The notes under the pieces were generated by a model that was not told where the DNA came from, searched no databases, and saw only the letters and a program-made list of their open reading frames with translations. A stretch of DNA of 64,000 bases, taken from positions 153,143 to 217,142 of IMG/VR virus record IMGVR_UViG_3300042895_001344; one strand, written 5' to 3'. Of this stretch, positions 49,604 to 62,892 are shown piece after piece. A program made the position numbers and the translations under genes. The stretch's first letter is position 1. Each line of letters starts with the position of its first letter.

Positions 49604-49607
49604 TTAA

Positions 49608-49849: not shown

Positions 49850-50577
49850 TATTTCGTGAATATACCTTTTTTAATCATTCTATCAAGGATGTTAGCACAT
49901 GCAATGTCTAAAGCTTTCTTTGTTGCAATACTAATTGTTGATTGATTGAACTTAATTGGGTCAATGGTCGCATCCGATAAAAGGGTTAACTCTCTTTTTG
50001 TTGTTGCCTCACCTAAACCTGACCCACCAAATACTACACCTGTTTCAGCATCAGTAAATCTAACCTGAAGACCTATACGAGTTACCATATTGTCTTTAAT
50101 ACCGTCTTTTAGGTTAATAGTTTCGTCTTCTGACACCGAGTAGTCATAACACTCAATCGTAACAAAATACTTCGCCAAATTGATTTTACCACGACCGTCT
50201 AATTTATTCTCAGAAATACCCGCAGCAGACGCTTGGAATTGTTTTACCATCCTATTCTTAATTTCTGTCTTATCCTCGGTAAATTTGAATCTATTTAAGT
50301 TTTCAAGGTATTCCATTGAAATGTTAGCAACACCCAAACCAACACGTTTTTCTTTTAACTCAGGATACATTTCATACATCTCATCAGAAATGCCTGCCTT
50401 TAATATTTGAATTGGAATTTGAGGACCGTCGTAATCCATGTAAGCACTTATGTCTCGTTTTTTTTCAAAATCTGCTTTATACTGTTCGGTTTTTGTTGAT
50501 CCTATTGTTTGTCCCATTGCATTATCTGCAATTAAACAGGTTAAAATAAAAATTAAAAATATTATTAAATGTCTCAT
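49849..50577 (-). CDS. CsgG/HfaB-like exported protein
   Basis: Signal peptide ...NAMG|Q; GVANISMEYL.N.NRFKFTE; IGLQVRFTDAETGVV.G.G.G; C-terminal A.KKAL helix. Confidence 0.65.
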   Translation of the reverse strand: MRHLIIFLIFILTCLIADNAMGQTIGSTKTEQYKADFEKKRDISAYMDYDGPQIPIQILKAGISDEMYEMYPELKEKRVGLGVANISMEYLENLNRFKFTEDKTEIKNRMVKQFQASAAGISENKLDGRGKINLAKYFVTIECYDYSVSEDETINLKDGIKDNMVTRIGLQVRFTDAETGVVFGGSGLGEATTKRELTLLSDATIDPIKFNQSTISIATKKALDIACANILDRMIKKGIFTK

Positions 50578-50586
50578 AGTTTTATA

Positions 50587-51330
50587 TTAAGGGTTCCATT
50601 TATTTAATGCACTTATGTAGTTACTCGTCATATGATCTTTGGCAGTATTACCTGTGAATACAGCTTTAAGATATTCACCAACTCTTTGCCAATCAATCAT
50701 CCATTTTTTAACTTTACCCTCACTATCAATACGTAATTCAGTATTAACGTGGTGATATCCAATATTTGGGGCACGAGTAACAACATCTAAATTATTAACA
50801 ATCCTTAATGATTCAATTGATGATTTATCAAAGTTCTGTTTGAATACTTTATTACCAACTCTTGGACTACCGATAGTACAACATATAATTTTATTTGATT
50901 TATAAATTGAATAAATCTCATATGCACATAAGGTAGAAACTGCAGCTCCCAAACTGTGACCGCAAACAATAATATTATCAACTTCACCCTCCCCACCTAA
51001 TGTGGATAATGCTTTTTCAAATGATTTATAAGTTTCGTCTTTAACAGCGTCCCAAGATGATTTAAATCCAATGTGAACTTTTTCACCATCTTGAACAAAT
51101 GGAACTTTATCAATTGATGCGTCGTTTTGGAAATCCTTTTTAGAAGAACTTCCTCTCCAAACGATATAGATAGATTTATCCTTTGTGGCAACAAATCCTT
51201 GTGTATCTGTTTTTTTATCGTCAATCCATTTAATTAATTTTAATCTTTGTGCTTTAAAATCAATGTCTTTTTGTTCTGAATATACTTTCTCGGTTAAACC
51301 GACATTGTATAGTATTTCGTTTTTTGTCAT
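50587..51330 (-). CDS. Class-3 lipase (alpha/beta hydrolase)
   Basis: VWRGS, VHIGF, GHSLG, TIGSPRVG, VNNLDVVTRAP, Y.HV, DH. Confidence 0.92.
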   Translation of the reverse strand: MTKNEILYNVGLTEKVYSEQKDIDFKAQRLKLIKWIDDKKTDTQGFVATKDKSIYIVWRGSSSKKDFQNDASIDKVPFVQDGEKVHIGFKSSWDAVKDETYKSFEKALSTLGGEGEVDNIIVCGHSLGAAVSTLCAYEIYSIYKSNKIICCTIGSPRVGNKVFKQNFDKSSIESLRIVNNLDVVTRAPNIGYHHVNTELRIDSEGKVKKWMIDWQRVGEYLKAVFTGNTAKDHMTSNYISALNKWNP

Positions 51331-51354
51331 TGTGTATTTGTTTTTGTTATAATA

Positions 51355-51591
51355 TTACTGTCTTGCTGGCCATATACCACGAGTGGCTATTATGTATTTC
51401 ATACCATCCATAGGTGGTTCCATTTTAGGTACCGCAAATAAATTTGGTGTTGCTCCGTATCTATCTTGCAGTAATACATATAACGCCTCATTTTCCCTTA
51501 TGTTTAATAATTGTCCGTTGCATTCTACATATCCTTGAGGAGCGTAGCCTCCTGCAAATAATTTAATTGCCCCAATTAATTCTTCTTCCAT
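51355..51591 (-). CDS. Stand-alone phage tail-collar domain protein
   Basis: IGAIKLFAGGYAPQGYVECNGQLL...ALYVLL...YG; YIIATRGIWP. Confidence 0.85.
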   Translation of the reverse strand: MEEELIGAIKLFAGGYAPQGYVECNGQLLNIRENEALYVLLQDRYGATPNLFAVPKMEPPMDGMKYIIATRGIWPARQ

Positions 51592-51594
51592 AGT

Positions 51595-52668
51595 TTATTG
51601 TGTTTTTGTTTTAGATTGATCACCCTTCTTTAAAAATATATCAAATATTGTTTTAGGACTGTATTCTACAAGTAATATTAAACCCTTCCTCAACGTAGAG
51701 TTTTTTACAACGTGATTTAAAATATCTTTAATAACCTCTTTAATGGCGAAATTTTTAGTGTCAAAATATGTTCCATCAAAATATCTTGGACTTGTTCCCT
51801 CACCACCTGGTGAACCGTGATGAGCACCTATAGAGGTACGCCAATAATCAGCATGATTTTGCCATTCAGGAACTGAAACCAATTCAGGTGAATCAAAAAA
51901 TAAATTCCACGATAATACATTACCCTTTTGTAACATATTACCAGTACCTAAGTTAAAAAGATTTAAAAAGTATTGATTAAACTTATCTAATTTGTGATCA
52001 CTTGTTGTTACCATTCCTCCTATTTCTACATTGATATGTCCTGTACTATATGCTTCTTCCTTTATTGCAAATTCAGGATTTTTAAATCTTGGTGATAAAC
52101 CCTTTCCGAGTTGAAATATAGGTTCTTTAGGATTTCCTGGTAGATGTGTTAAAACACGAATAGCATTTTCTTTGTTGATAGGATACTTACGAGAACTGTA
52201 TTTTAATAATGGCCAAATTGCTCTTAATAGACCACCTTGATTTTCACCTGGTGTTAACCAAATTTTTCCCTCAACCATCATATCCGCAGCAATTTCCTTT
52301 GTGTCTTCATTAACCCATCCTCTTTGTCCCGTAACTGTTACTTCCACATTGATACAAATCTCATCTCCAATCCACATCCCTTGTTGAGGACAGATTATGG
52401 AATAAATTCTACCTTCATTGGTATATCCTATTCTTGAAATATAAGGAGCAAATTGTACATAACAACGTTTTGGGTCTTTTTCCCCATTTAGGGTATTCCA
52501 ACTAAACATTGGCCATTTAACACCCCATTGTCTTTGTAGTAAATTAATGTTATCCATATTACCCAACATAGGTAATGAGGTTAAATCTGTGGTAGGATAT
52601 AGCATTTTCTTTTGTTTTTCAGATGGAAAACCACCTTGCCATCCCGTAGGAATTTGTTCGTTTGTCAT
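51595..52668 (-). CDS. Hypothetical protein
   Basis: 357-aa ORF; TATTTATA at 52679-52686 upstream. Confidence 0.7.
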   Translation of the reverse strand: MTNEQIPTGWQGGFPSEKQKKMLYPTTDLTSLPMLGNMDNINLLQRQWGVKWPMFSWNTLNGEKDPKRCYVQFAPYISRIGYTNEGRIYSIICPQQGMWIGDEICINVEVTVTGQRGWVNEDTKEIAADMMVEGKIWLTPGENQGGLLRAIWPLLKYSSRKYPINKENAIRVLTHLPGNPKEPIFQLGKGLSPRFKNPEFAIKEEAYSTGHINVEIGGMVTTSDHKLDKFNQYFLNLFNLGTGNMLQKGNVLSWNLFFDSPELVSVPEWQNHADYWRTSIGAHHGSPGGEGTSPRYFDGTYFDTKNFAIKEVIKDILNHVVKNSTLRKGLILLVEYSPKTIFDIFLKKGDQSKTKTQ

Positions 52669-52691
52669 ATTCTTTTAATATAAATACACAA

Positions 52692-52716
52692 AAAAGGGAG
52701 TTTTTAACTCCCTTTT
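52692..52716 (-). terminator. Intrinsic terminator
   Basis: AAAAGGGAGTT-TTT-AACTCCCTTTT. Confidence 0.8.
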
Positions 52717-52719
52717 ATA

Positions 52720-52968
52720 CTAACCTTCTGTTTCTTCTTTCTTTTTGTGAGAGAATTTATCCAAAGTATCTGCACCCATTCCAATTCCCGTGATTAACAT
52801 CACCGCATTCACCAATTCAGGTGATGGAGCGAAATCCGCGTGAGAGAACGAATTTAAAATCATCGTAATACATAGGAATAAAGCACCTATCATTGCTATT
52901 ACCGGCTTTACCGATATTGATCCTCTTTCATCTTTGAAAATTTCAATAACCCATTGTTTAAAATTCAT
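52720..52968 (-). CDS. Two-TM small membrane protein (holin-like)
   Basis: Two hydrophobic helices, charged C-terminal tail. Confidence 0.55.
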   Translation of the reverse strand: MNFKQWVIEIFKDERGSISVKPVIAMIGALFLCITMILNSFSHADFAPSPELVNAVMLITGIGMGADTLDKFSHKKKEETEG

Positions 52969-52997
52969 AGTTTTTTATTTTTTGTCTTTTGTTTATT

Positions 52998-53666
52998 TTA
53001 TCCTTCCGTATGCATTTCTGCATTTTCATCTTTAATTTTACCACATTTTAAACACTCCTCAATGCCATCACCATCCAAGTCACCCCAAACGTGTTCACAT
53101 TGTCTATGTGCGAAATACATATCTATTTTACCGTCACCATCAAAATCAATACCATCTATTGTACCATCACCATCTTCATCAACCTCAACACCTGTTCTTG
53201 GTTGTGATTTGAAAGGACTTTCAACAACTTGAGGATTATTTGGTTCTGATTTTACCTCTACTTTGTTTGCCTCAATTAAGTTGATTTCATGTGCGTTCTT
53301 TGCGGCTTGCACAAATGCATCTGGAATCAATGGAGTGTTATTTGGTGGAGTTACAGGCATATCAGCAGTATTACTCATTGACGTACCATCTTCTTCGTCC
53401 ATTTTCTGAACTAACATCTTATCCTTATCAGTATCACTAAACCAATAGTCAATGATTTTACCATAACTACCGATAAACGCTCCTAATAATAATAAAAGAA
53501 GTTCTTTCCATTCTCCTTCAATCGTAGATTTATTTAATATACCAAAGAACATTCCTCCAATAATAATCATAAATCCACCTAACACTATCGCAGTGATATA
53601 CCACCTGCGTTTCATCATATTTGCTAATAAATCCTTAAATCCGCTTGGCGGTTGTTCATTACTCAT
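52998..53666 (-). CDS. Two-TM membrane protein with DxDGDG Ca-binding-like repeats and a CxHxW...CxxC tail
   Basis: DEDGDGTIDGIDFDGDGKID; CEHVWGDLDGDGIEECLKCG. Confidence 0.65.
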   Translation of the reverse strand: MSNEQPPSGFKDLLANMMKRRWYITAIVLGGFMIIIGGMFFGILNKSTIEGEWKELLLLLLGAFIGSYGKIIDYWFSDTDKDKMLVQKMDEEDGTSMSNTADMPVTPPNNTPLIPDAFVQAAKNAHEINLIEANKVEVKSEPNNPQVVESPFKSQPRTGVEVDEDGDGTIDGIDFDGDGKIDMYFAHRQCEHVWGDLDGDGIEECLKCGKIKDENAEMHTEG

Positions 53667-53683
53667 CTTTTTTTAATTTAAAA

Positions 53684-53998
53684 TTACCATTTAGGTGCTT
53701 CTTCTTTAAACTCATCACCTTCTTTTTTCTTAGGTTTTGGTGCTGGCGCCGGTTTAGCACTACCGTCTCCACCTTTATTGATGATTACAGTTTTACCACC
53801 ACCCGATTGTTGAGTTTGTGAATTGGTAATGTTGATTACAGGTGCCGCTTGTTGAACGGGAGCCTCTTTTTCGTCACCACCTGTTAATTTTGTTGTAAAC
53901 CAACCACCCACACCTAATGTGATGGTGCTTACTAAACCGATAATGATGTTCTTAATTGAACCACCTGTACTTTCTGATTTTTCTTGTTCTTCTGCCAT
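53684..53998 (-). CDS. Single-TM protein with a Pro/Gly/Lys-rich tail
   Basis: IIIGLVSTITLGVGGWF followed by low-complexity sequence. Confidence 0.65.
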   Translation of the reverse strand: MAEEQEKSESTGGSIKNIIIGLVSTITLGVGGWFTTKLTGGDEKEAPVQQAAPVINITNSQTQQSGGGKTVIINKGGDGSAKPAPAPKPKKKEGDEFKEEAPKW

Positions 53999-54030
53999 AA
54001 TTTTGTGTTTTTTGTCTTTATATAATTATC

Positions 54031-54399
54031 TTAAATTTTATTAAAATCTGTAATTCCTAACATATTACCCGCAACATCGTATAATGCAATCCTATACGCT
54101 GAAGATGGTAAAGCGGATGTATACACCCTTAAAATGTTATCACCAACCTTAACCTCACTTGTTGATTTTGATACCACTCTATTGGAAATATCAAAAATCT
54201 TAACGGTTACAGTTTGAGCAACATCACTTTTTATGTTCATTGCAACTTCATTTGTTATAAATGAAGTTTCTAATTTTAATCCCACTGAACTTGAGATTTT
54301 AAGGTTGTCACTAATCACTTGTGGTTGCATTGGTATGTCTACTTTTCTACATCCAACAAGTAAGATTAATCCAAAGAGTACGAGAGATACTTTTTTCAT
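54031..54399 (-). CDS. Lipoprotein consisting of a T9SS-CTD-like Ig domain
   Basis: LVGC lipobox; VTVKIFDISNRVV...G.N.L.V.TSALPSSAYRIAL. Confidence 0.6.
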   Translation of the reverse strand: MKKVSLVLFGLILLVGCRKVDIPMQPQVISDNLKISSSVGLKLETSFITNEVAMNIKSDVAQTVTVKIFDISNRVVSKSTSEVKVGDNILRVYTSALPSSAYRIALYDVAGNMLGITDFNKI

Positions 54400-54411
54400 T
54401 TTTTGTCTTGT

Positions 54412-54765
54412 TTAATTTATAATTATTCTTGTTTTACCTATTTGATTATTATTTTGATCCTTTAACACGACACTTAGGTTTTTTGTCGGTAAAGTATTAG
54501 TAAATATTTTAAGAGAGTTTAATCCTACTTTACCAGTAAACCTTTCCCTTGATACTACTTGGTTTTGAACCGTATCAATCATTGTTAAAGTATATACTCC
54601 TCCTGTAGTTAAATTAATATTAATAACATCCCCGTTTTTTACCTTATTTTCAGATAAGGAGAAAAATTCCACATTTGTCGGTGACACAGGTGTAAACGGA
54701 ACCATTTTTTTGCACGATATTATAAAAACCATACAACACAATAATATAATTTTGATACGTTTCAT
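54412..54765 (-). CDS. Lipoprotein paralog with a T9SS-CTD-like domain
   Basis: IISC lipobox; YTLTMID...VV...G.NSLKIFTNTLP. Confidence 0.55.
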   Translation of the reverse strand: MKRIKIILLCCMVFIISCKKMVPFTPVSPTNVEFFSLSENKVKNGDVININLTTGGVYTLTMIDTVQNQVVSRERFTGKVGLNSLKIFTNTLPTKNLSVVLKDQNNNQIGKTRIIIN

Positions 54766-54768
54766 ATT

Positions 54769-55662
54769 TTAAAATTGAAAGTTTGTTCCTATCATAAATA
54801 GAATTGGATTACTCTTTTTATACCCAACCGATTCACTTAATTTATTCCAAGTTGTGTTATATCTAACATTAGTATTCAATACAAATTTTTTAGTTATTTT
54901 CCAATCAATAGATGTACCATAATATAAGTCCAAATTGAAATCATCTACATATGCTAAATCCGATTCAGTCCCATCTTTGAATACTTTGTAGATATCACTC
55001 ATTGCAAATATTTGTGGTGAGATGTTTACTCTCTTTGTTTTGAATGTATACGTATACATTGCCATACCTCTATAACTAATTTGACTTGATGATGGCATTT
55101 GTGGATATATTAAATCTTTAAAATCACCATTTTCATCTACTATATATTTTCCTTCCCATTGACCTTGATAACTTCCCCAAAACGATTTTGACGCAATCAC
55201 ACTATAACCAAATGTTCCAAACTTTTTAGTTCTGAATACATCAATGAATGATAGAGAAATATCTTTTTGAAAATCAAAATCGGTTGAATAGAATGATTGT
55301 AATGTAGTAGTTCTTGTATTCGTATTTCTACTGAAACCATAACCCACACCATAGTAGTTCCATATTGGATTTATTGATGATGCGAATGAGTGACCCCATT
55401 TACCATTTTTAGATGATTTACTATATCCTAAATTTAAGGTAGTAGATACTTGTTTTCCAATTACACCTACTGATAAATTTGAGGATGAAAGAACATCTTT
55501 TGAAAAATCAATATATGACTCTAATATACCTAAATTATTCCAATCACCACTTTCTCCAAATAATTCTTTTGGTGATAGTTGTAAGGTATCTGGTTTTACA
55601 ATTTGTGCGTTTGTAACAAATGTTGTCAAAATTAGTGACAGAATTAATAATAGTTTTTTCAT
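54769..55662 (-). CDS. Outer-membrane beta-barrel protein
   Basis: Signal peptide ...VTNA|Q; amphipathic strands; ISPQIF; C-terminal Phe (GTNFQF). Confidence 0.75.
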   Translation of the reverse strand: MKKLLLILSLILTTFVTNAQIVKPDTLQLSPKELFGESGDWNNLGILESYIDFSKDVLSSSNLSVGVIGKQVSTTLNLGYSKSSKNGKWGHSFASSINPIWNYYGVGYGFSRNTNTRTTTLQSFYSTDFDFQKDISLSFIDVFRTKKFGTFGYSVIASKSFWGSYQGQWEGKYIVDENGDFKDLIYPQMPSSSQISYRGMAMYTYTFKTKRVNISPQIFAMSDIYKVFKDGTESDLAYVDDFNLDLYYGTSIDWKITKKFVLNTNVRYNTTWNKLSESVGYKKSNPILFMIGTNFQF

Positions 55663-58271
55663 TAATTTATTTTTATTTTTAATGATTTTCCATCTTTATT
55701 AACTGCGTCCGTTGAACCTATTGAAATTAAACCCAATATGTTATCCAATTTTGTGTTTGACGAAAATGAAATCTTATATGTTGTTGTCTTATCTAAACTT
55801 GTACTACCATCACTTACCAAAGAACCTAAATTAATGTAATTACCCTTGTTGGTTGCATAGTTGGTAGGTGAACCTTTTGTGGTAAATTGTATTCCTTTAA
55901 AATTTAAGACCGAATTATCGTAGTTTAATTGAAATTGAGTTCCTACCACGTTTTGTTGTAATGGGTCAAATGTGATGTAAGCATAAACACTATCACCAAT
56001 TACTTCGGTCATAATAGATGCGTTGATGTCAGTTGATATTGGTGTACTCATTGATGTTCTAACTGTCATCGTTGTGATATTATTTGATGGAGGAGTTGCC
56101 GAATGTGATAAGTTTACATCACCTTTCCAACTAACAGCCAAATCGTAGTTATAACTTATTACATTATCTAATAAACTAAAATTATAAGTTTTTCCTGCAA
56201 AATTTTGAAAAGAACTCCAAGTTGACTTACCAATTTTATTATAAATTGAATCAGGTATCAAACGTATTGTATTATCCAAAGTATAATTACTAACTAAGTT
56301 TTGTACACCCGTTAAATTTTGTAATAATTTGAAACAATCCGCTTCATTAAATAAACCATCATCATTTACATCTGCGTTTTTATATTGAATTCCGTAAGTA
56401 AACTCATTACCACTTTGATTTCCAAATATACCACCATTTGCCAATTCCTTAAATGCCAAATACACATCTGATACTGTTACGATACTATTATACAAAGTTT
56501 TTAATTGTGTACTATCATATTCTTGTAATTCCATTTTGTGTTGTTTGAACGCACCTTGTTGGGTAAGTCCAATACCACATGCAAATGCATAGTCGGTATT
56601 TGAACCATTCATATTTCTAATATATTGATTATATGCAGAAGTTCCATCGGTTACTTTTGTTAATGGAGATGGAACAGTATATTGTGCCCAACCATTATTG
56701 TCATGTGATGTATATGTAACAGGCCCATCATACGCATCTAATATTTTTACATTTGATATTTTCGTTGGGTCTATACTTCCAACTTGTCTCATATCAATTA
56801 ACAATCTACTATTACCATTTAACCAACTTGCATTTGGATTTGTATAAGACCACTCTACCCCACCCGGAGATATAGTTGCTTTGTATGATGCAGGTGCCGA
56901 TACGAATTGGTAACTTAATCCCCATCCACCATAACCCGATGTTGATACTCCATTACGAGTTGAACCAACATATTCACTTAACCCCTGTACTACTTTAATA
57001 TAAACTTCTTTTGTTTGTCCGTCTGATATTACACCAGCATGTACCGCTGCGGCTGGAATATATGAATCACTTGTATAGATATCGGTTCCCCATATTGCTC
57101 CACCTGTTGTACCTGTTATTGTTATTCTATATATCTTACCAATATCCGATTCATTAAATTGTTGCATATCGGATGTTCCTGCTGTTAATGGAATACCAGT
57201 TGTATAAATCTTTGAAGTATCTATTTGATTTGAAAGAAATACTTTACCCAAACCACTCAATGATTTATAACCATCCGCCGCTGCCCAATTTGAATATGTG
57301 TCGTTTCTTTTGAATATCTGTGCTAAGAATTTTGTTTTATCTATTGAAGTATTAAACTTAAATCCAAATAATGCTTTTATAGTTTCTCCGTTTGAATGTG
57401 TTACTGAATTGGTATAGAACTCCGTAAATGTTGCATCATCGGGATTAGACCAAGTTCCATATTCAATTACATATGGGTTACTCCAATTGTTTGATAAGTC
57501 ATTCCATTGATTACCATTCCATTTTGTTACTGCATAATCCTCACTATGATTATATCCGTTTGGTTCACCATTTGCCCAATTATTATACACACCTGGTCGG
57601 TTTCCGGCAGTTGGTCCGTTGGATGTTTTCATCACAGTCCCCTTTTCAGGACCCGCATCAATTACCCAAGTTCCATCTATAACTTCATCTGTTGCTGCAA
57701 ACCATATATTTGATTGTGGTACATTAGCTTGAATAAATAAATCTTCCGATGATGATGTTAGTGTTAATAGATAACCCGTCTGTCCTTTGAATGTTGTTGT
57801 TAACGCAATTGCTCTTGCGTTTGTATAAGTTGTACCGGTTGTTACGGGTTTGTAAAAGTGACCATTTACTCCATTGAAATAATATCCTGGTTGATTAACA
57901 GTTGCGGCCACTGAAATATTAATATCACCAATTACTGTTCCTGTGTTTATTTTTAGAGACGCTAACGCAGTATTAATACTTGCCATTGTTCCAGTTACCA
58001 CTAAACGAGTTTTATTACCACTTAAAGTAAATCCACTTGCTGCCGTTAAACCCGTTGTTGTGTTTAATACGAATGTTGTACCTGATGGTGGATTGACTAA
58101 ACTTATAGAAGCAAGTAAAGTAGATGTTGCACCAAATCCACTTAATGAAAATCCACTAGCGTCTTGTCCTGTGGTATTCACAGTAAATGATTTAGGGTCT
58201 GGAGCCGTTACTGACTGACCAAACCCTAAAAATGATATAAATAAAAATAATACTACTAATAGTTTCTTCAT
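55662..58271 (-). CDS. Exported adhesin-like protein: C-type lectin + LCCL + dockerin-like + cohesin-like domains
   Basis: Signal peptide ...LGFG|Q; GYLLTLTS.SE, WANGEPN, WNDL; IWGTDIYTSDS.I.AAAVHAG; ADVNDDG; GTQFQLNYD. Confidence 0.8.
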   Translation of the reverse strand: MKKLLVVLFLFISFLGFGQSVTAPDPKSFTVNTTGQDASGFSLSGFGATSTLLASISLVNPPSGTTFVLNTTTGLTAASGFTLSGNKTRLVVTGTMASINTALASLKINTGTVIGDINISVAATVNQPGYYFNGVNGHFYKPVTTGTTYTNARAIALTTTFKGQTGYLLTLTSSSEDLFIQANVPQSNIWFAATDEVIDGTWVIDAGPEKGTVMKTSNGPTAGNRPGVYNNWANGEPNGYNHSEDYAVTKWNGNQWNDLSNNWSNPYVIEYGTWSNPDDATFTEFYTNSVTHSNGETIKALFGFKFNTSIDKTKFLAQIFKRNDTYSNWAAADGYKSLSGLGKVFLSNQIDTSKIYTTGIPLTAGTSDMQQFNESDIGKIYRITITGTTGGAIWGTDIYTSDSYIPAAAVHAGVISDGQTKEVYIKVVQGLSEYVGSTRNGVSTSGYGGWGLSYQFVSAPASYKATISPGGVEWSYTNPNASWLNGNSRLLIDMRQVGSIDPTKISNVKILDAYDGPVTYTSHDNNGWAQYTVPSPLTKVTDGTSAYNQYIRNMNGSNTDYAFACGIGLTQQGAFKQHKMELQEYDSTQLKTLYNSIVTVSDVYLAFKELANGGIFGNQSGNEFTYGIQYKNADVNDDGLFNEADCFKLLQNLTGVQNLVSNYTLDNTIRLIPDSIYNKIGKSTWSSFQNFAGKTYNFSLLDNVISYNYDLAVSWKGDVNLSHSATPPSNNITTMTVRTSMSTPISTDINASIMTEVIGDSVYAYITFDPLQQNVVGTQFQLNYDNSVLNFKGIQFTTKGSPTNYATNKGNYINLGSLVSDGSTSLDKTTTYKISFSSNTKLDNILGLISIGSTDAVNKDGKSLKIKIN

Positions 58272-58274
58272 AAA

Positions 58275-59927
58275 TTATTCAACAATCAAATTAATCTTGT
58301 TTCCGTTTCCATCAACCGCGTCAGCTAAAACTGTATAAAATAAACCCGCCGTATTTGTTATGGTTTCTTTCGGTATAAAAGTTAATTTGTAAGGTGTCCC
58401 TATTTTAATTCTACCAGTTTTCATTTGATCCATTGAACCGAATGTTAATCTACCATCTCCATTTGTTGAGAAGTTAGTTACGTTTGGACCGGCGTCAAAT
58501 GATATATTATCAAATGTTAATTTTGAATTGTCATATTGTAAGATTACCTCTAATCCCGCTAATCCGTCTTTTGTTAATGTTCCCGTTAATACAACTTTAC
58601 CATTAACAATTGTAGAGTTTAATCCTAATGTTGCCTTTTCAATTGTTGGTGTATATGACATTGATTGAACTGAAAATGATTTGATTGATGAGGTACTTTT
58701 TTCATTAATTGAGTTTAAGTAAGTTCCTGCTGCAATTCTACTTGCGATTACATCAGGGTCAGATGAATGAGACCAATCCAAATCACCACCCCATGCGTAT
58801 ACCATATCTACCGATTGATTTGATGATGTTACTTTTGTTTTGTAAGTAGGTACACCATCTAACCAACTTTGATTTAATAAACCACTATACCATTTGAATA
58901 AACCACTATTTGTACTCAATGGAATCCATGCACTATCTTTTACATTAGCGATACCCATTACATATGCAAACATATAATATGAATCACTTTCACTAAACAC
59001 ACTTTTACTCTTTGTAATTTGACCTATATTCTTTTGTAATTGTGGTCTTGTAAAATAAGTTTTTACACCCGCGATATCCGTTTGTGAAATACCTAAAAAT
59101 GCTTTATATGCGTCTGATACTGTTATAATGTTATTCATAAAAGTTTTTCCTGTTGCACCATACATCCACACCGCCAAACTATCTCCCACTTTCACTTCTG
59201 TTGTAAATGTCGCCTCACCACTTGCATCTAATACTTTTGTTGCAATTGGTGTTACTGTAAAATCAATTGTACCATCTGTTTTTATTGGAAATAATGCAAC
59301 ACTGTGTGCGGTAATATCATATCCTGTTGGGAATAAAACTCTTAGTTTGAACTGAGACGTATTACCAACAACATTTGTTAAAGACATTGTACCTGGATCA
59401 GTTGTAATTGGTGTAATGTATGCACTTGTTGCATCAATTGAATATGATAAGTCTAATTTATGAATGTCGGTATACGCACCCAAATCTTTGATTACATATT
59501 TTTGAGTTGCAACATCTCCGTTGATAGATGCATCGGTTCTTTGAACAGTTAATTGACCAACATTCCAATCTGCGTTGGCTGCGTAACCCCATGGAGATAT
59601 TAGATATTGTGCATATAAATCTTTAGCTGTAATACTATTTGCTGCACTTGAAGTAAATTTATAAGACGACCAACCTGTGTAGAATGTTTGAACTGATGTT
59701 CCTTGTGAGAACGTCGTTGAAACATATGAAAGTGCCTTATTGTTAAATTGATATCTCAACCAAAAATAACGAGGCGTGGTTGTACCTCTCGCAACCGTGT
59801 ATTTAACTGAAACCGTATCACCAACCTTTAACCCTGTTGTAGGTGTCACAGATTGGTTGACAGTTAATTGTGCATTTGTTGCTATGGATATTACTAGTAT
59901 TCCAAGTAGCGTTAATAGTTTTTTCAT
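58275..59927 (-). CDS. Exported protein with dockerin-like and cohesin-like domains, paralog of 55662..58271
   Basis: Signal peptide ...ATNA|Q; ITVSDAY; GGDLDWSHS; GLEVILQYDNSKLTF. Confidence 0.7.
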   Translation of the reverse strand: MKKLLTLLGILVISIATNAQLTVNQSVTPTTGLKVGDTVSVKYTVARGTTTPRYFWLRYQFNNKALSYVSTTFSQGTSVQTFYTGWSSYKFTSSAANSITAKDLYAQYLISPWGYAANADWNVGQLTVQRTDASINGDVATQKYVIKDLGAYTDIHKLDLSYSIDATSAYITPITTDPGTMSLTNVVGNTSQFKLRVLFPTGYDITAHSVALFPIKTDGTIDFTVTPIATKVLDASGEATFTTEVKVGDSLAVWMYGATGKTFMNNIITVSDAYKAFLGISQTDIAGVKTYFTRPQLQKNIGQITKSKSVFSESDSYYMFAYVMGIANVKDSAWIPLSTNSGLFKWYSGLLNQSWLDGVPTYKTKVTSSNQSVDMVYAWGGDLDWSHSSDPDVIASRIAAGTYLNSINEKSTSSIKSFSVQSMSYTPTIEKATLGLNSTIVNGKVVLTGTLTKDGLAGLEVILQYDNSKLTFDNISFDAGPNVTNFSTNGDGRLTFGSMDQMKTGRIKIGTPYKLTFIPKETITNTAGLFYTVLADAVDGNGNKINLIVE

Positions 59928-59929: not shown

Positions 59930-60577
59930 TTATTTAACAAATAATTTAGTTATTAATTTATCCGCCGATTTTTTTAAGGCGTTACTAAGTGACGTTTGAT
60001 TAAATTGACCTCCCTCATCAACAATTAATGTTGACATTGATATTTCTGAAGATGATTCTTCGACCATTATTTCCTTTTCTTTTTTACCATCCTTATATAA
60101 AGTTCCTTTCATACGAATGACAACTTCTTCTTCATTTTTGTGAAAAACAGAAATGTTCTTTTTTGTTGTAAGAACATCTAAATAAATGATTTGAACTTTT
60201 AATTTGTATGGGGCTGAAGGTGTTAAATCATAACCCTTTTCTTGTAAGAATTCTTCCAATGTATTTTTTACACCGAAAGCTAAATTTCTATTACCTGCCA
60301 ATTTACCCATCTTAACTTCATTGGTAACACTCTCCACCCAAATATGGTCTTCAGCCACATAGAATATATTTTCAGGTGAGTTCTTGAATGTACCATCAAT
60401 CCTCCACGAAATCCAATTTGAGATGTCTCTTGTTATTTCTCTTTGGCCTGAAAATTCCAAAACCGCCATGGATATACCGAATATCATTCCAAATATTACC
60501 CATGATATCGCAAAGTATAAAAAACCTAAAAAGATTTTTTCTTTAATATTAATTGATAGTGTTCTTAATTTTTCCAT
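59930..60577 (-). CDS. Membrane-anchored CsgG-like protein (paralog of 49849..50577)
   Basis: N-terminal TM helix; LAFGVKNTLEEFL; FNQTSLSNALKK. Confidence 0.55.
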   Translation of the reverse strand: MEKLRTLSINIKEKIFLGFLYFAISWVIFGMIFGISMAVLEFSGQREITRDISNWISWRIDGTFKNSPENIFYVAEDHIWVESVTNEVKMGKLAGNRNLAFGVKNTLEEFLQEKGYDLTPSAPYKLKVQIIYLDVLTTKKNISVFHKNEEEVVIRMKGTLYKDGKKEKEIMVEESSSEISMSTLIVDEGGQFNQTSLSNALKKSADKLITKLFVK

Positions 60578-60664
60578 ACTGTTCTGAGTTTACAATTCCC
60601 TCAGAACCACATATTAATATAATACATAATATCTTGAGAGAGATACGTTTATTTTTTGTCTGTC

Positions 60665-60672
60665 TATAAATA
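60665..60672 (-). promoter_or_regulatory. TATTTATA putative late-promoter motif heading the envelope operon
   Basis: 87 nt upstream of the ATG at 60577. Confidence 0.5.
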
Positions 60673-60772: not shown

Positions 60773-61555
60773 ATGGGAAATTTTAAACATCTCACAGAAT
60801 TGGAAATTCAACAAATGACATTTGATTGGAGATACCGAGGATTTACAACATTAGAACTCTTAACAGAAGAAGAATGTGACGAAATCAATGACGAACTTGA
60901 ACGTTTACGTCAGGAGAGAAAAGGAACATTAACAGACGATGGTAAGGAGTGGGGTGAATGGGATCCATTCGCATATCCACATAAATTATCGGATAAACTT
61001 GCAAAACTATATGTTCACCCTAAATTAATTGAAGCTTGTCAGTTTCTAATGGAAGGTGAAATTGTTGGGATGCAAAGTTGGGCATACTTTAAACCACCAG
61101 GACAATTAGGTAGAGATATGCACCAAAACGCCTTTTACACGGGTTGTAAACACAATGAAATTATCAATACGGCATTAGCATTGGATAACCACGACAACAG
61201 TAATGGTTCCGTGTGGAACTACGAAGGTTCACATAGATTACAAACCTTACCAATTGAGGTTGATGAGGAAAGAACAAAAACTAATCCATCGTTTTGGAGA
61301 AATGAAAGAGGTAAACCTTGTATTATGCCTGAGGGACACGATTTCCGTAAGGTAGAAGGAATTCTAAAAAAAGGACAAGTGGTTTTATTACACTCACATT
61401 GTGTACACGGGTCGGAAGCTAACAACTCAAATAGAATGAGAAGAAACTTTTTAGGTGGATTCTTAAAAAAAGGTGCATTTTACAATCAGGGAAGTCATAT
61501 GAAACGTGAACCAATTGATGTATATGAACTTAGAGATAAACATTGGAGTGAATAG
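60773..61555 (+). CDS. PhyH-family 2OG-Fe(II) dioxygenase with a non-canonical HQN motif
   Basis: GFTTLELLT.EEC, YFKPPG, MHQN, GSHR, VHGSEAN.S.RMR. Confidence 0.85.
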   Translation: MGNFKHLTELEIQQMTFDWRYRGFTTLELLTEEECDEINDELERLRQERKGTLTDDGKEWGEWDPFAYPHKLSDKLAKLYVHPKLIEACQFLMEGEIVGMQSWAYFKPPGQLGRDMHQNAFYTGCKHNEIINTALALDNHDNSNGSVWNYEGSHRLQTLPIEVDEERTKTNPSFWRNERGKPCIMPEGHDFRKVEGILKKGQVVLLHSHCVHGSEANNSNRMRRNFLGGFLKKGAFYNQGSHMKREPIDVYELRDKHWSE

Positions 61556-61693: not shown

Positions 61694-61766
61694 GCCTCGT
61701 TAGCTCAGTTGGTAGAGCAAGTCATTTGTAATGATTAGGTCTGCGGTTCAAGTCCGTAACGAGGCT
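61694..61766 (+). tRNA. trnT: tRNA-Thr(TGT)
   Basis: GCCTCGT/ACGAGGC acceptor, AGTCA-TTTGTAA-TGATT anticodon arm, GGTTCAA T-loop. Confidence 0.93.
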
Positions 61767-62036
61767 CAACAGGTGACGACGGTGGTGTGACCCCACTGTC
61801 TATGAATCTCAACTATCCGTTTGAATCTAGATGTAGAACGGTGAGAGTAGAGTTACTATAAGTTGGAGTAATTAACCATTAAGCGAAAAGTAACCTCCGA
61901 TTCATGAATCAGTCTCGGACATGATGTACATAGATGGTACGAAAAACCTGTAACTTTTTGAAACTAACTCAACGAGGACTTTGTTAACCAGTGCATGACA
62001 CGGAGGTGCAACTTAAGTTGGGTTGGAATCAAACAC

Positions 62037-62109
62037 GCTTCCTTAGCTCAGTTGGTAGAGCGCAAAACTGTTAATTTTGAAGTCGGGGGATCGTGACCCT
62101 CAGGGAGCG
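62037..62109 (+). tRNA. trnN: tRNA-Asn(GTT)
   Basis: GCTTCCT/AGGGAGC acceptor, CAAAA-CTGTTAA-TTTTG; T-loop ATCGTGA. Confidence 0.88.
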
Positions 62110-62202
62110 CAACGTGATAATCACTCCACGCAAGTGGTAAGCACCCGGCAGTAACACCGGGATGGCAATGTGGTTATTAAGAGGTAAGGAAAAGACTAAA
62201 AT

Positions 62203-62277
62203 GGGAATGTAGCTCAGTTGGTTAGTAGCAGTGCTCTCATAAAGCAAAGGTCTTTGGTTCAAATCCAAACTTTCCCA
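62203..62277 (+). tRNA. tRNA with CAT anticodon (elongator Met or Ile2; not initiator-like)
   Basis: GGGAATG/CTTTCCC acceptor with one mismatch, loop CTCATAA, GGTTCAAATCC. Confidence 0.8.
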
Positions 62278-62471
62278 CACGATTCGGTTAGTCACCGAAT
62301 AGTATGTCCAATATGATGAGAAATGGTTTGACAACCATATGGAAACGTACATTGACGTATAGGAAGAACGTCAGGGGACATCACCCCGACCTCGTGAGGA
62401 CGAAATGATTATTCCTAACCCGAAAGGGGACAGCTAAGACACCTGTGAGTTGGATAAATAAAGGTGTCAAC

Positions 62472-62557
62472 GGAGAGATGGCAGAGTTGGTCTATCGCGA
62501 CAGTCTTGAAAACTGTAGACTGTAACAGGTCCGTGGGTTCGAATCCTACTCTCTCCG
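62472..62557 (+). tRNA. trnS: tRNA-Ser(TGA)
   Basis: GGAGAGA/TCTCTCC, ACAGT-CTTGAAA-ACTGT, long variable arm, GGTTCGAATCC. Confidence 0.95.
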
Positions 62558-62820
62558 CTGTAGAGTTTGCCCGTGGTAACGGTCTAATGGGGAAACCTTG
62601 TAGACTTCTCGCGTCAAAACCCAAAACACTGATCTACTGGTGCTTGGGCTAAATGTAGAAAAAAAACGGGATCTTTTTTAATCACAAATAAAAATGTGAG
62701 CTATAATAAAGTAGCCAATTATAAGCCAACATAAAGCTGTTGGATACAGACGGAGTAATTAACCAGAGTATAGTGCAACAATTGTGATATTATAACAAAT
62801 ACCCATTTGAGTGATTATTT

Positions 62821-62892
62821 GTTCTTGTCGACTAAGGGTTAGGTCACCTCCCTTTCACGGAGGTAATACGGGTTCGAATCCCGTCGAGAATA
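62821..62892 (+). tRNA. trnE: tRNA-Glu(TTC)
   Basis: GTTCTTG/CGAGAAT, CCTCC-CTTTCAC-GGAGG, GGTTCGAATCC. Confidence 0.92.

What the first reader, a model, noticed from the sequence alone, without database searches (positions are those of the whole stretch)
55662..58271. Phage-encoded exported lectin: C-type lectin with EPN/WND motifs plus an LCCL domain
Seen: WANGEPNG and WNDL in a C-type lectin-like domain, an intact-looking LCCL domain, then dockerin-like and cohesin-like domains in the same chain. Established: EPN with WND indicates Ca-dependent mannose/glucose/GlcNAc-type binding in animal C-type lectins, and LCCL is linked to LPS binding. Inference: it could cross-link infected cells to uninfected bacteria or algal surfaces. 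Having cohesin and dockerin in both paralogs would allow head-to-tail polymerisation into a filament.
Basis: partly seen in the sequence, partly recalled or inferred. Interest (0 to 1): 0.7.

Follow-up and report, generated by a model that had tools for sequence, protein, structure and literature searches.

The report
Phage-encoded exported modular lectin
A giant freshwater phage of Bacteroidota encodes a secreted sugar-binding protein (C-type lectin plus LCCL on a dockerin/cohesin-like base) in a conserved late operon whose lectin head is swapped between related phages, which suggests a virus-made envelope or adhesion complex whose function is untested.

Summary
Window 55662-58271 (-) encodes an 869-aa protein with these parts:
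- a Sec signal peptide that leaves Gln at +1;
- an adhesin-type N-domain;
- a C-type lectin domain with invariant EPN, E and WND calcium/sugar ligands;
- an LCCL domain;
- a hypervariable beta-sandwich;
- a half-canonical dockerin-like segment;
- a cohesin-fold C-terminus.

The contig is a 217-kb fragment of a T4-like jumbo phage. Relatives reach 335-340 kb and come from lake metagenomes.

The gene is the third of a nine-gene operon of exported and membrane proteins. That operon carries the same upstream motif as the portal and other head-module genes and ends with a holin-like gene.

Across 71 related viral loci this gene slot holds CTLD (38), CTLD+LCCL (14) or PA14 (18) heads on one conserved base. 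Head type does not follow the similarity of the flanking genes.

The cultured Flavobacterium phage immuto has an analogous cassette: an EPN/WND lectin with a dockerin-like tail, plus a cohesin with a T9SS sorting domain.

Best reading: a late-made, exported, Ca-dependent glycan-binding adhesin module of a phage envelope complex. Head-to-tail cohesin-dockerin filaments are not supported. No paper found describes this.

The parts
58218..58271 (-). Signal peptide (res 1-18). Predicted SPase I cleavage leaves Gln19 at +1, as in the Bacteroidetes Q-rule.
   Evidence: Sequence. The same pattern occurs in all six signal-peptidase-I-type proteins of the island and in the full-length homologues. The Q-rule is described in PMC5837995.
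57894..58217 (-). N-terminal beta domain (res 19-126). With the CTLD it forms an adhesin-type 'head'.
   Evidence: pLDDT about 90. The head module (res 1-295) recurs at 38-55% identity in many other proteins. One is a 2061-aa Sediminibacterium adhesin with a CHU_C T9SS domain.
57450..57893 (-). C-type lectin-like domain (res 127-274). EPN is at 57558-57566, E244 at 57540-57542 and WND at 57498-57506. The domain has no cysteines.
   Evidence: Pfam Lectin_C 24.0 bits. VIA Z 17.6 and Foldseek TM up to 0.85. The ligand residues are invariant. Coordinates were checked.
57192..57449 (-). Beta-rich linker domain (res 275-360), variable towards its C-terminal end.
   Evidence: Secondary structure. Entropy profile.
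56892..57191 (-). LCCL domain (res 361-460), an optional insertion present in about a fifth of the homologues.
   Evidence: Pfam LCCL 52.6 bits. Column occupancy is 0.28 among CTLD forms. It is present in 14 of 71 proteins in this gene slot.
56514..56891 (-). Hypervariable beta-sandwich (res 461-586) of unknown family.
   Evidence: Highest column entropy in the protein, 1.3-1.8. Identity ranges from 29 to 98% and is uncoupled from the flanking domains. No Pfam or Atlas lead.
56268..56513 (-). Dockerin-like helical segment (res 587-668). The canonical second F-hand DVNDDGLFNEAD lies at 56337-56372; the first repeat is degenerate.
   Evidence: Calcium positions 1, 3, 5, 9 and 12 are D or N in 64 of 64 sequences. 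The top nine PDB sequence hits are dockerins at E 0.1-0.3. No Pfam Dockerin hit.
55665..56039 (-). Cohesin-fold C-terminal domain (res 745-869).
   Evidence: VIA Z 13-14 to type I cohesins and Foldseek matches to type II cohesins. Pfam Cohesin 21.5 bits, below the 24.1 cut-off. Family profile against PDB finds cohesin 4ums at E 0.0019.
58275..59927 (-). Upstream paralogue P0002 (550 aa): signal peptide, unknown head, and the same C-terminal base with a degenerate dockerin-like part and a cohesin-like part.
   Evidence: BLASTP E 5e-15 over 280 aa. Always adjacent to the lectin gene in the related loci. Atlas sister clusters carry Cohesin, Dockerin_1 and Por_Secre_tail. Loop degeneracy.
59930..60577 (-). 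First gene of the operon: a 215-aa protein with an N-terminal membrane anchor and a faint YajG-type lipoprotein likeness.
   Evidence: Pfam PF03923 24.7 bits against a cut-off of 25. Conserved at this position in relatives.
60665..60672 (-). Putative late-promoter motif (gene sense: aGTATTTATAg), 88 nt upstream of the first operon gene.
   Evidence: The same motif lies 5-36 nt upstream of the portal and neighbouring head-module genes. In the whole contig, 28 ORFs have it in sense orientation within 60 nt upstream, against 6 in the reverse orientation.
54769..55662 (-). P0003, 297 aa: signal peptide plus a probable outer-membrane beta-barrel ending in Phe. It is present in about half of the related loci.
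   Evidence: All-beta AF2 model of low confidence (pLDDT 56.6). The best folds are OM barrels such as NanC, OmpA-like, PcoB and EspP, at E about 1e-3. Presence or absence in relatives.
54031..54765 (-). Two small paralogous lipoproteins (117 and 122 aa) with a beta-sandwich that weakly resembles a T9SS sorting domain or DUF3244.
   Evidence: Lipobox Cys. Por_Secre_tail 15.7-16.8 bits, below the cut-off, and DUF3244 20.2 bits. hhalign to the phage immuto T9SS sorting domain gives E 0.0019 and probability 14%.
52692..53998 (-). End of the operon: a 104-aa membrane protein, a 222-aa two-TM protein with DxDGDG repeats, an 82-aa two-TM holin-like protein, and a terminator hairpin at 52692-52716.
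   Evidence: Translations. Terminator scan. Conserved order in relatives.

Best explanation
The 869-aa protein is a Sec-exported, calcium-dependent glycan-binding protein made by a freshwater T4-like jumbo phage that infects Bacteroidota.

Its glycan-recognition part is an adhesin-type head (N-domain plus C-type lectin domain with a complete mannose/glucose/GlcNAc-type EPN/E/WND site), an optional LCCL domain and a hypervariable beta-sandwich. This part is mounted on a conserved dockerin-like/cohesin-fold base.

The base is shared with the neighbouring paralogue. It most likely assembles the two proteins, together with the co-transcribed lipoproteins and (where present) an outer-membrane barrel, into an envelope-associated complex.

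The operon appears to be expressed late, with the structural genes, and ends with a holin-like gene. The complex would therefore be in place or released around lysis, where it binds polysaccharide on host-type cells, debris or particles.

Shown: domain identities, export signal, phage origin, operon structure, head swapping and conservation of the ligand residues.

Inferred: calcium and sugar binding, complex formation, late timing, final location and the biological pay-off (adhesion or aggregation of infected cells or their remains).
For: - Domains.
- Ligand residues invariant in 49 distinct homologues.
- Signal peptide with Gln at +1 in all six signal-peptidase-I-type proteins of the island and in the full-length homologues. 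This is a Bacteroidetes-specific rule (PMC5837995), already noted for Porphyromonas phage proteins (PMC10367356).
- Phage context: T4-type head and portal genes, a 217-kb viral record, relatives on 335-340-kb contigs, lake-water metagenomes.
- Conserved operon order (215-aa anchor protein, P0002, lectin slot, optional barrel, two lipoproteins, two membrane proteins) in about 80 viral loci.
- Three head types on one base, interleaved with respect to flanking-gene similarity. Among loci whose P0002 is at least 80% identical, 7 carry CTLD+LCCL and 5 carry PA14.
- The same head sits on a chromosomal T9SS adhesin of Sediminibacterium.
- PA14, the alternative head, is also a calcium-dependent sugar-binding adhesin domain (established knowledge of yeast flocculins).
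- Flavobacterium phage immuto has a signal-peptide EPN/WND lectin with a dockerin-like tail next to a protein with Cohesin (36.7 bits) and a T9SS sorting domain (44.8 bits).
- Virus-only Atlas clusters combine Cohesin, Dockerin_1 and Por_Secre_tail.
- Promoter-like motif shared with the portal and neighbouring head-module genes, and a terminator after the holin-like gene.
- Freshwater metatranscriptome contigs cover the operon, and the head gene is enriched 30-fold or more over its neighbours in the same RNA runs.
Against: - No recognisable T9SS sorting domain or other outer-membrane export signal in this protein or its paralogue. Surface display is therefore not shown, and the protein may stay periplasmic until lysis.
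- The CTLD lacks the two canonical disulfides, and sugar binding is untested.
- The Pfam Cohesin score is under its cut-off, and the dockerin is only half-canonical.
- The complex prediction gives only weak support, and through a non-canonical interface.
- The exact promoter motif is found upstream of the operon in only 28 of 68 relatives.
- RNA-library contigs can contain DNA.
- No experimental data exist for any member, and no literature was found.
Confidence: 0.55

Rival explanations
1. Receptor masking. The lectin binds the host's own surface glycans (LPS, capsule or glycosylated T9SS adhesins that serve as phage receptors). This blocks superinfection and keeps progeny from being lost on debris of the lysed cell. 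Head swapping would then track the receptor glycan diversity of different hosts.
For: - The protein is exported into the envelope.
- Head swapping and a hypervariable domain fit tracking of variable host glycans.
- LCCL domains bind lipid A in CRISPLD2.
- Small lipoproteins are co-encoded. Known exclusion proteins such as T5 Llp and Cor are lipoproteins. There is a faint PHROG hit to Cor, but over the signal peptide only.
- Late expression with a holin-like gene fits protection of progeny at release.
Against: - Classical exclusion genes are small and expressed early. This operon shares its upstream motif with structural genes.
- An 869-aa multi-domain protein with an assembly base is elaborate for masking.
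- No route to the outer leaflet has been identified.
- The Cor hit is not significant.
Confidence: 0.2
2. Virion accessory. The exported lectin complex meets progeny virions at lysis and decorates them, or acts as a soluble adaptor. This gives particles an extra glycan-binding function for adsorption to hosts or particles, much as receptor-binding proteins swap heads.
For: - The modular head swapping and hypervariable domain resemble receptor-binding proteins.
- The promoter motif is shared with structural genes.
- The next transcription unit holds a tail-collar-domain protein.
- In an Aquirufa MAG, a signal-peptide protein with the same head lies next to a gene with an endosialidase-chaperone (tail-fibre) domain.
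Against: - Tailed-phage virions assemble in the cytoplasm, and a cleaved Sec signal peptide puts this protein in another compartment.
- No PHROG structural family matches any operon protein.
- No cohesin or dockerin partner was found elsewhere in the 217-kb fragment.
- No precedent is known to me.
Confidence: 0.1
3. Cohesin and dockerin in both paralogues pair head-to-tail between chains to build a lectin-studded filament.
For: - A cohesin fold and a dockerin-like segment are in the same chain.
- The paralogue shares the module.
- The complex prediction passed its mark weakly: 0.35 against a best control of 0.00. In calibration the mark was reached by 51 of 78 solved complexes and 2 of 108 mismatches, and passes at or below 0.60 are more often wrong than right.
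Against: - The predicted interface is cohesin edge (res 791-810, 831-833) against cohesin edge (res 473-491 of the paralogue), with no dockerin contact.
- The paralogue's dockerin-like loops lack the calcium ligands in both halves, and this protein's first loop is degenerate.
- Only about 75 residues separate the dockerin-like part from the cohesin. That fits one compact module or an intramolecular contact equally well. The monomer pTM is 0.70.
Confidence: 0.07
4. Lysis or envelope-disruption machine. The operon (inner-membrane proteins, outer-membrane lipoproteins, a barrel and a holin-like protein) is the phage's lysis cassette for a Bacteroidota envelope. The lectin and LCCL domains would target LPS or peptidoglycan-linked glycans to destabilise the outer membrane.
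For: - An 82-aa two-TM holin-like gene ends the operon, followed by a terminator.
- Lipoproteins and membrane-anchored proteins are in the same unit.
- LCCL has lipid A affinity in CRISPLD2.
Against: - No endolysin, spanin or holin family hit for any operon protein.
- LCCL and the barrel are optional among relatives.
- Swapping lectin heads has no obvious role in lysis.
Confidence: 0.08

Closest known systems
Collectin-type animal C-type lectin domains (mannose-binding protein A, SP-D, CEL-I, SRCL, ASGPR)
   Same: Same fold (Z up to 17.6, rmsd 1.7 A). All five Ca-site-2 ligands are present, with EPN and WND as in mannose/glucose/GlcNAc-type lectins.
   Different: No cysteines, so neither canonical disulfide. 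No coiled-coil neck. Preceded by a bacterial adhesin-type N-domain. Encoded by a phage and exported into a bacterial envelope. Binding is untested.
Bacteroidota T9SS surface adhesins carrying the same N-domain+CTLD head (e.g. the 2061-aa Sediminibacterium protein in L095)
   Same: The head module is 38-55% identical and keeps EPN/E/WND. Both have a signal peptide and both are multi-domain adhesin-like proteins.
   Different: The bacterial protein ends in a CHU_C type B T9SS sorting domain and carries cadherin, He_PIG and Laminin_G domains. The phage protein has none of these and ends in a dockerin-like/cohesin-fold base instead.
Flavobacterium phage vB_FspM_immuto cassette (immuto_13 to _18)
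   Same: A T4-like Bacteroidota phage and the nearest cultured relative by major head protein. It has a signal-peptide EPN/WND lectin with a dockerin-like tail, a signal-peptide cohesin protein, and a homologue of the window's 535-aa barrel protein (E 2e-6).
   Different: In immuto the lectin-dockerin and the cohesin are on separate chains, and the cohesin protein carries a significant T9SS type A sorting domain. In the window both modules are fused in one chain and no sorting domain is detectable. Sequence similarity is limited to the CTLD (31.6% identity) and a short cohesin motif.
Cellulosomal and non-cellulosomal cohesin-dockerin modules
   Same: Cohesin jelly-roll fold (Z about 14). One canonical dockerin F-hand calcium loop.
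   Different: No enzymes are attached. The dockerin has a single functional loop. Both modules lie in one chain. Pfam scores are at or below the cut-offs. Pairing is not shown.
LCCL-domain proteins (cochlin, CRISPLD2/Lgl1, Limulus factor C)
   Same: Clear LCCL family match (52.6 bits), combined with a C-type lectin domain as in factor C. These are extracellular proteins that interact with bacterial surfaces or lipid A (PMC10892792).
   Different: No cysteines. The match covers profile positions 34-92 of 96. The domain is an optional insertion within the phage family. Its ligand is unknown.
PA14/GLEYA adhesins (yeast flocculins and Epa adhesins)
   Same: Sister phages carry a PA14 head in the same gene slot on the same base. 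Both head types are calcium-dependent sugar-binding adhesin domains (established knowledge).
   Different: This window's protein has the CTLD+LCCL head, not PA14.
DGR-diversified C-type-lectin-fold receptor-binding proteins (Bordetella phage Mtd)
   Same: A phage-encoded CLec-superfamily fold, with variability among relatives.
   Different: No reverse transcriptase and no template repeat. Here the lectin site is invariant and another domain varies. The protein is exported rather than being a tail-fibre tip.

Membership tests
C-type lectin-like domain (Pfam PF00059) | Family HMM score above the curated cut-off | tested here: met
   24.0 bits against 22.6, res 164-268. Many homologues also carry a precomputed PF00059 hit.
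C-type lectin-like domain (Pfam PF00059) | CTLD fold (two helices, two sheets, long loop region) | tested here: met
   VIA Z 17.6, rmsd 1.7 A over 123 residues to SRCL. Dozens of CTLDs score Z above 14. Foldseek TM up to 0.85. Model pLDDT is about 90 in this region.
C-type lectin-like domain (Pfam PF00059) | Ca-site-2 ligands (EPN or QPD, a downstream Glu, and WND) | tested here: met
   E236-P-N238, E244 and W256-N-D258 align to MBP, SP-D and CEL-I. They are invariant in 49 homologues and in 20 diverse head modules.
C-type lectin-like domain (Pfam PF00059) | Two conserved disulfide bridges | tested here: not met
   The domain has no cysteine. More distant relatives keep a Cys pair flanking EPN and WND (NWC...CWND).
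C-type lectin-like domain (Pfam PF00059) | Calcium-dependent carbohydrate binding | not testable with these tools
   Needs a glycan array or binding assay with and without EDTA.
LCCL domain (Pfam PF03815) | Family HMM score above the curated cut-off | tested here: met
   52.6 bits against 22.6, res 391-450, profile positions 34-92 of 96.
LCCL domain (Pfam PF03815) | Conserved cysteines (disulfides) of eukaryotic LCCL modules | tested here: not met
   No cysteine in res 361-460. The fold could not be judged because pLDDT is 34-49 there: the alignment used for modelling held few LCCL-containing sequences.
LCCL domain (Pfam PF03815) | Lipid A or bacterial surface binding | not testable with these tools
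   Known only for CRISPLD2 and cochlin.
Cohesin (Pfam PF00963) | Family HMM score above the curated cut-off | tested here: not met
   21.5 bits against 24.1. Some close homologues do carry a PF00963 hit. The family profile's best PDB hit is a cohesin at E 0.0019.
Cohesin (Pfam PF00963) | Nine-stranded jelly-roll cohesin fold | tested here: met
   Res 745-869 score Z 13.3-14.2 at rmsd 2.1-2.5 A to type I cohesins. Type II cohesins appear in Foldseek.
Cohesin (Pfam PF00963) | Binds a dockerin partner | tested here: inconclusive
   The complex prediction with the paralogue scored 0.35 against a best control of 0.00, a weak pass. The mark was reached by 51 of 78 solved complexes and 2 of 108 mismatches, and low passes are often wrong. 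The interface is cohesin to cohesin, not dockerin to cohesin.
Dockerin (Pfam PF00404) | Family HMM match | tested here: not met
   No hit at E up to 0.1. The top nine PDB sequence hits for res 585-700 are dockerins, but at E 0.1-0.3.
Dockerin (Pfam PF00404) | Two duplicated F-hand calcium-binding loops, each followed by a helix | tested here: not met
   The second loop, D634/N636/D638/N642/D645, is canonical and conserved. The first has Leu at position 3 and no acidic ligands. In the paralogue both loops are degenerate.
T9SS cargo (type A TIGR04183 or type B CHU_C/TIGR04131 sorting domain) | C-terminal sorting domain detectable by the family models | tested here: not met
   No NCBIfam or Pfam hit for this protein or its paralogue at E up to 0.1. 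hhalign of the C-terminal profile to the immuto protein matches its cohesin part, not its sorting domain.
DGR variable protein (CLec-fold target of a diversity-generating retroelement) | Nearby reverse transcriptase and a template/variable repeat pair | tested here: not met
   No RVT_1 match in the 217-kb record. No repeat involving the gene.

The most novel reading that the evidence does not exclude
Freshwater jumbo phages of Bacteroidota, and in a split form with a T9SS anchor the cultured Flavobacterium phage immuto, build a cellulosome-like glycan-binding scaffold in or on the host envelope late in infection. Interchangeable lectin heads (CTLD, CTLD+LCCL, PA14) sit on a cohesin/dockerin base. 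This virus-encoded 'adhesome' would reprogram how infected cells, their debris or the released virions stick to polysaccharide particles and neighbouring hosts. It would be a previously undescribed class of phage host-manipulation module, widespread in lakes.
Probability: 0.25. Interest if true: 0.8.

Novelty: new variant of a known kind. Interest (0 to 1): 0.6.

Why it matters
Exported phage proteins that follow the Bacteroidetes Q-rule have been noticed before, but their function is unknown (PMC10367356). Here such a protein can be read domain by domain. It turns out to be one member of a large, virus-only family found in lake metagenomes: more than 2800 homologues, about 80 syntenic viral contigs, and fragments in freshwater and river metatranscriptomes.

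The family shows three features together: an invariant sugar-binding site, an adjacent hypervariable domain, and wholesale exchange of lectin heads. That pattern is typical of molecules at a host-virus or cell-environment interface.

If the complex changes the adhesion of infected Bacteroidota, which are major degraders of particles and polysaccharides, it would link phage infection to aggregation and particle attachment in lakes. If it masks receptors or arms virions, it would be a new way of doing so.

The cohesin-plus-T9SS-sorting-domain protein of phage immuto would also mean that phages use the host's type IX secretion system to display their own scaffold. Phage immuto has a cultivable host, so these ideas can be tested directly.

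Tried and rejected
- **Nucleotide search of the phage collection** with 24 kb of the window. It gave only a chance 269-bp hit to a Staphylococcus phage.
- **PHROGs.** No family for the lectin, its paralogue, the barrel, the lipoproteins or the membrane proteins.
- **NCBIfam.** Nothing for the lectin, so no T9SS sorting domain.
- **Complex prediction** of the two C-terminal modules. The result was weak support only: score 0.35, best control 0.00. In calibration 51 of 78 solved complexes and 2 of 108 mismatches reached the mark, and passes at or below 0.60 are more often wrong than right. The interface was not dockerin to cohesin. I do not count it as evidence for polymerisation.
- **AF2 model of the putative barrel P0003.** Confidence is low (pLDDT 56.6), so the matches to outer-membrane barrels are only suggestive, and a PorP/SprF relationship could not be tested.
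- **Are the two small lipoproteins T9SS sorting domains?** Sub-threshold HMM scores and hhalign probability 14% leave this inconclusive.
- **Hypervariable domain 461-586.** No Pfam, PDB-sequence or Atlas lead.
- **DGR hypothesis** for the variability. Rejected: no reverse transcriptase and no template repeat.
- **Genome scan with the single head sequence.** It found nothing; a profile was needed.
- **Literature searches** for phage lectin, cohesin, dockerin, T9SS and LCCL. They found no description of this family.
- **Virion-structural reading.** Considered and ranked low because of the conserved cleavable signal peptide.

Full report
**1. The observation**

The ORF at window 55662-58271 on the minus strand is intact and encodes 869 residues. 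WANGEPNG (res 232-239) and WNDL (256-259) are present.

Pfam places a C-type lectin domain (24.0 bits, cut-off 22.6) and an LCCL domain (52.6 bits, cut-off 22.6) above their curated thresholds. A cohesin match falls just below its threshold (21.5 against 24.1).

An AlphaFold2 model built on 48 homologues has mean pLDDT 81.7 and pTM 0.70. Residues 127-274 superpose on solved C-type lectin domains at Z up to 17.6 (rmsd 1.7 A over 123 residues). Residues 745-869 superpose on type I and II cohesins at Z about 14.

In sequence alignments to mannose-binding protein, SP-D and CEL-I, residues E236, N238, E244, N257 and D258 take the places of the five Ca-site-2 ligands.

The dockerin-like part is weaker. 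The second F-hand loop (DVNDDGLFNEAD, res 634-645) is canonical, and its calcium positions hold D or N in 64 of 64 relatives. The first loop is degenerate. Pfam Dockerin gives no hit. The nine best PDB sequence matches for res 585-700 are all dockerins, but only at E 0.1-0.3.

It shares the last 280 residues at 24% identity (E 5e-15). Its dockerin-like loops have lost the calcium ligands in both halves.

**2. It is a phage gene, and the host is a member of Bacteroidota**

The window carries a T4-type major head protein and a portal. It is the last 64 kb of a 217-kb viral record judged 65% complete. Near-identical proteins lie on contigs of 335-340 kb.

The nearest cultured relatives by head protein are Flavobacterium phage immuto and Microcystis phage Mel-JY01. 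The sequence is held by many lake-water metagenomes.

All six signal-peptidase-I-type exported proteins of this region have Gln directly after the predicted cleavage site, and so do the lectin's full-length homologues. This Q-rule is specific to Bacteroidetes (PMC5837995). It has been noted, without a function, for proteins of Porphyromonas phages (PMC10367356).

The closest cellular copies of the head module are in freshwater Bacteroidota. The best is a short contig binned with a Schleiferiaceae MAG at 73% identity, which is probably phage DNA. Others include Sphingobacteriaceae, Daejeonella, Sediminibacterium and Aquirufa.

**3. Anatomy**

The protein is a mosaic:
- signal peptide, res 1-18;
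- beta-rich N-domain, 19-126;
- C-type lectin domain, 127-274;
- beta-rich spacer, 275-360;
- LCCL, 361-460;
- beta-sandwich, 461-586;
- dockerin-like helices, 587-668;
- short beta linker, 669-744;
- cohesin fold, 745-869.

Each module turns up separately in other proteins of the 50%-identity library:
- The head (res 1-295) occurs on many proteins, some of them long.
- LCCL occurs in tandem arrays.
- The region 461-869 occurs in 630-660-aa proteins whose N-terminus is a PA14/GLEYA domain instead.

One chromosomal carrier of the head is a 2061-aa Sediminibacterium protein with cadherin, He_PIG and Laminin_G domains and a CHU_C type IX secretion signal. That is a host-type surface adhesin.

**4. 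Context: an operon of envelope proteins**

In the 217-kb record, proteins with signal peptides are concentrated in window 46228-59927.

The lectin is the third gene of a tightly packed minus-strand unit. In order, the unit encodes:
- a 215-aa anchored protein;
- the 550-aa paralogue;
- the lectin;
- a 297-aa probable outer-membrane barrel;
- two paralogous small lipoproteins;
- a 104-aa membrane protein;
- a 222-aa two-TM protein with DxDGDG repeats;
- an 82-aa two-TM holin-like protein.

A hairpin-plus-T-run terminator follows at 52716-52692.

Eighty-eight bases upstream of the first gene lies aGTATTTATAg. The same motif sits 5-36 bases upstream of the portal gene and of neighbouring genes of the head-gene cluster. 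Across the contig it shows a strong orientation bias: 28 ORFs have it in sense within 60 nt upstream, against 6 in the reverse orientation.

I read this as a late promoter. That is an inference, and only 28 of 68 relatives keep the exact octamer upstream of the operon.

Three RNA libraries (freshwater, river and lake metatranscriptomes) contain contigs of this phage lineage. In them the head gene is at least 30-fold deeper than its neighbours, against 3- to 5-fold in a DNA run. One library also covers the operon at low to moderate depth. This is consistent with transcription in nature, but contig depth is a poor measure and DNA carry-over cannot be excluded.

**5. Comparative evidence**

A scan of viral contigs with the C-terminal module returned 80 loci. 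The gene order is conserved in them.

The slot after the paralogue holds three forms: CTLD only (38 loci), CTLD+LCCL (14) and a PA14 head (18). Head type is interleaved with respect to the similarity of the neighbouring gene. Among loci whose paralogue is at least 80% identical to the window's, seven have CTLD+LCCL and five have PA14.

LCCL is a clean 100-residue insertion. The barrel gene is present in roughly half of the loci.

Within the CTLD forms the lectin site is invariant. Residues 461-580 are the most variable part of the protein. Their identity to the window (29-98%) is uncoupled from that of the flanking domains.

No reverse transcriptase or template repeat is present, so this is not a diversity-generating retroelement.

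Flavobacterium phage immuto carries an analogous cassette:
- a signal-peptide lectin with WNGGEPNN/WNDL (Lectin_C 57.3 bits) and a DVNNDSRFTVSD dockerin-like tail;
- a second signal-peptide protein;
- a signal-peptide protein with Cohesin (36.7 bits) and a T9SS type A sorting domain (TIGR04183, 44.8 bits);
- a homologue of the window's 535-aa barrel protein (E 2e-6).

The ESM Atlas holds several virus-only clusters that combine Lectin_C, LCCL, Cohesin, Dockerin_1 and Por_Secre_tail.

**6. Mechanism**

The best-supported reading is that the phage makes a calcium-dependent glycan-binding adhesin late in infection and exports it. Its conserved base joins it to the paralogue and probably to the co-encoded lipoproteins and barrel, giving an envelope-associated complex.

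Several points support an adhesin-like, glycan-directed function:
- the head is shared with host T9SS adhesins;
- the alternative head, PA14, is the sugar-binding domain of yeast flocculins;
- the EPN/E/WND site is invariant;
- LCCL domains have lipid A affinity in CRISPLD2.

What is not shown is where the protein ends up. Neither it nor the paralogue has a detectable T9SS sorting domain. It may therefore stay periplasmic until lysis releases it.

The biological pay-off could be any of the following:
- masking of receptor glycans on the cell and its debris;
- arming of released virions;
- a role in envelope disruption.

I give the general statement 0.55. The specific rivals get 0.2, 0.1 and 0.08, and the cohesin-dockerin filament model gets 0.07.

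**7. The polymerisation claim**

It passed its mark only weakly: 0.35 against a best control of 0.00. In calibration the mark was reached by 51 of 78 solved complexes and 2 of 108 mismatches, but passes at or below 0.60 are more often wrong than right.

The confident contacts are between the edges of the two cohesin-like sandwiches (res 791-810 and 831-833 against res 473-491). No dockerin residues are involved.

Taken with the degenerate dockerin loops, this gives no support for head-to-tail filaments. A heterodimer through the cohesin-like domains remains possible.

**8. Novelty**

The individual domains are known, and so are exported Q-rule proteins in Bacteroidetes phages.

Three things appear to be undescribed in the searched literature:
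- the combination of these domains in one phage protein;
- its place in a conserved late operon of envelope proteins;
- the exchange of lectin heads on a cohesin/dockerin base across a large lake-phage lineage, with a T9SS-anchored split version in a cultured phage.

I class it as a new variant of a known kind (modular lectin adhesins and non-cellulosomal cohesin-dockerin scaffolds). Its function is experimentally open.

Noticed in passing
window 46228-47835 (-): A 535-aa exported protein: a signal peptide with Gln at +1, a small Cys-containing N-domain, about 250 residues of Ala/Pro/Ser/Lys/Glu low-complexity repeats, and a C-terminal beta-rich part related to the barrel P0003 (E 5e-4). Its N-domain is homologous to immuto_18 of Flavobacterium phage immuto (E 2e-6), so this gene also belongs to the shared cassette.
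   Followed up: partly
window 54031-54765 (-): Two paralogous 117- and 122-aa lipoproteins that are little more than a beta-sandwich weakly resembling a T9SS C-terminal sorting domain or DUF3244. They are conserved in almost all related loci. They could be anchors for the lectin complex or could interfere with host T9SS. All scores are below threshold.
   Followed up: partly
window 52998-53666 (-): A 222-aa two-TM protein whose C-terminal part has three DxDGDG calcium-loop-like repeats (DEDGDGTIDGID, DFDGDGKIDMY, DLDGDG) and a Cys cluster (C-x15-C-x2-C). It is conserved in the operon of related phages.
   Followed up: no
window 52720-52968 (-) and 52692-52716: An 82-aa two-TM protein with a charged C-terminus (holin-like, no family hit) closes the operon. 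A strong hairpin terminator follows, and then a new copy of the GTATTTATA motif.
   Followed up: partly
window-wide, e.g. 503-510, 3533-3540, 28468-28475, 29230-29237, 32550-32557, 34384-34391, 38421-38428, 52679-52686, 60665-60672: A conserved upstream motif, (A/G)TATTTATA in gene sense, lies 5-90 nt before many genes, including the portal gene and neighbouring genes of the head-gene cluster. It is the reverse complement of the T4 late-promoter octamer TATAAATA, and the orientation bias is strong (28 against 6). It is probably this phage's late promoter.
   Followed up: partly
window 60578-60640 (-): An 8-bp-stem hairpin (GTTCTGAG...CTCAGAAC) ends 4 nt before the ATG of the first operon gene, in a long 5' leader. 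It may control translation.
   Followed up: no
window 547-7111 (-): Three large genes (992, 473 and 582 aa) plus a 107-aa ORF between them contain long Thr/Pro-rich repeat linkers, seen as GGTGTTGGTGT repeat families on the + strand. The 473-aa protein also hits collagen-like tail-fibre PHROGs. These are probably the fibre genes.
   Followed up: no
window 61694-62893 (+): A cluster of five tRNA genes (Thr-TGT, Asn-GTT, Met-CAT, Ser-TGA, Glu-TTC) lies next to the operon.
   Followed up: no
window 47842-48570, 50587-51330, 60773-61555: Auxiliary-type enzymes flank the exported-protein island: a 2OG-Fe(II) oxygenase, a class 3 lipase and a PhyH-family dioxygenase.
   Followed up: no
window 51355-52668 (-): A 78-aa protein that is just a phage tail-collar domain (Pfam Collar, 52.1 bits) follows a 357-aa protein with no family hit. 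This is a separate unit with its own GTATTTATA motif, directly downstream of the lectin operon.
   Followed up: no
L099 4184-7283 (Aquirufa MAG contig): A 780-aa signal-peptide protein with the same N-domain+CTLD head, plus F5/8 type C and Laminin_G_3 domains, lies directly after a gene with an endosialidase-chaperone (Peptidase_S74) domain typical of tail fibres. It may be a prophage or a mis-binned phage, and it bears on the virion-accessory rival.
   Followed up: partly
L089 (Schleiferiaceae MAG, 3.4-kb contig): The closest genome-collection match to the head module (73% identity) is a short contig binned with a freshwater Schleiferiaceae MAG from Lake Mendota. It is probably phage DNA co-binned with its host, and so a lead to the host lineage.
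   Followed up: no
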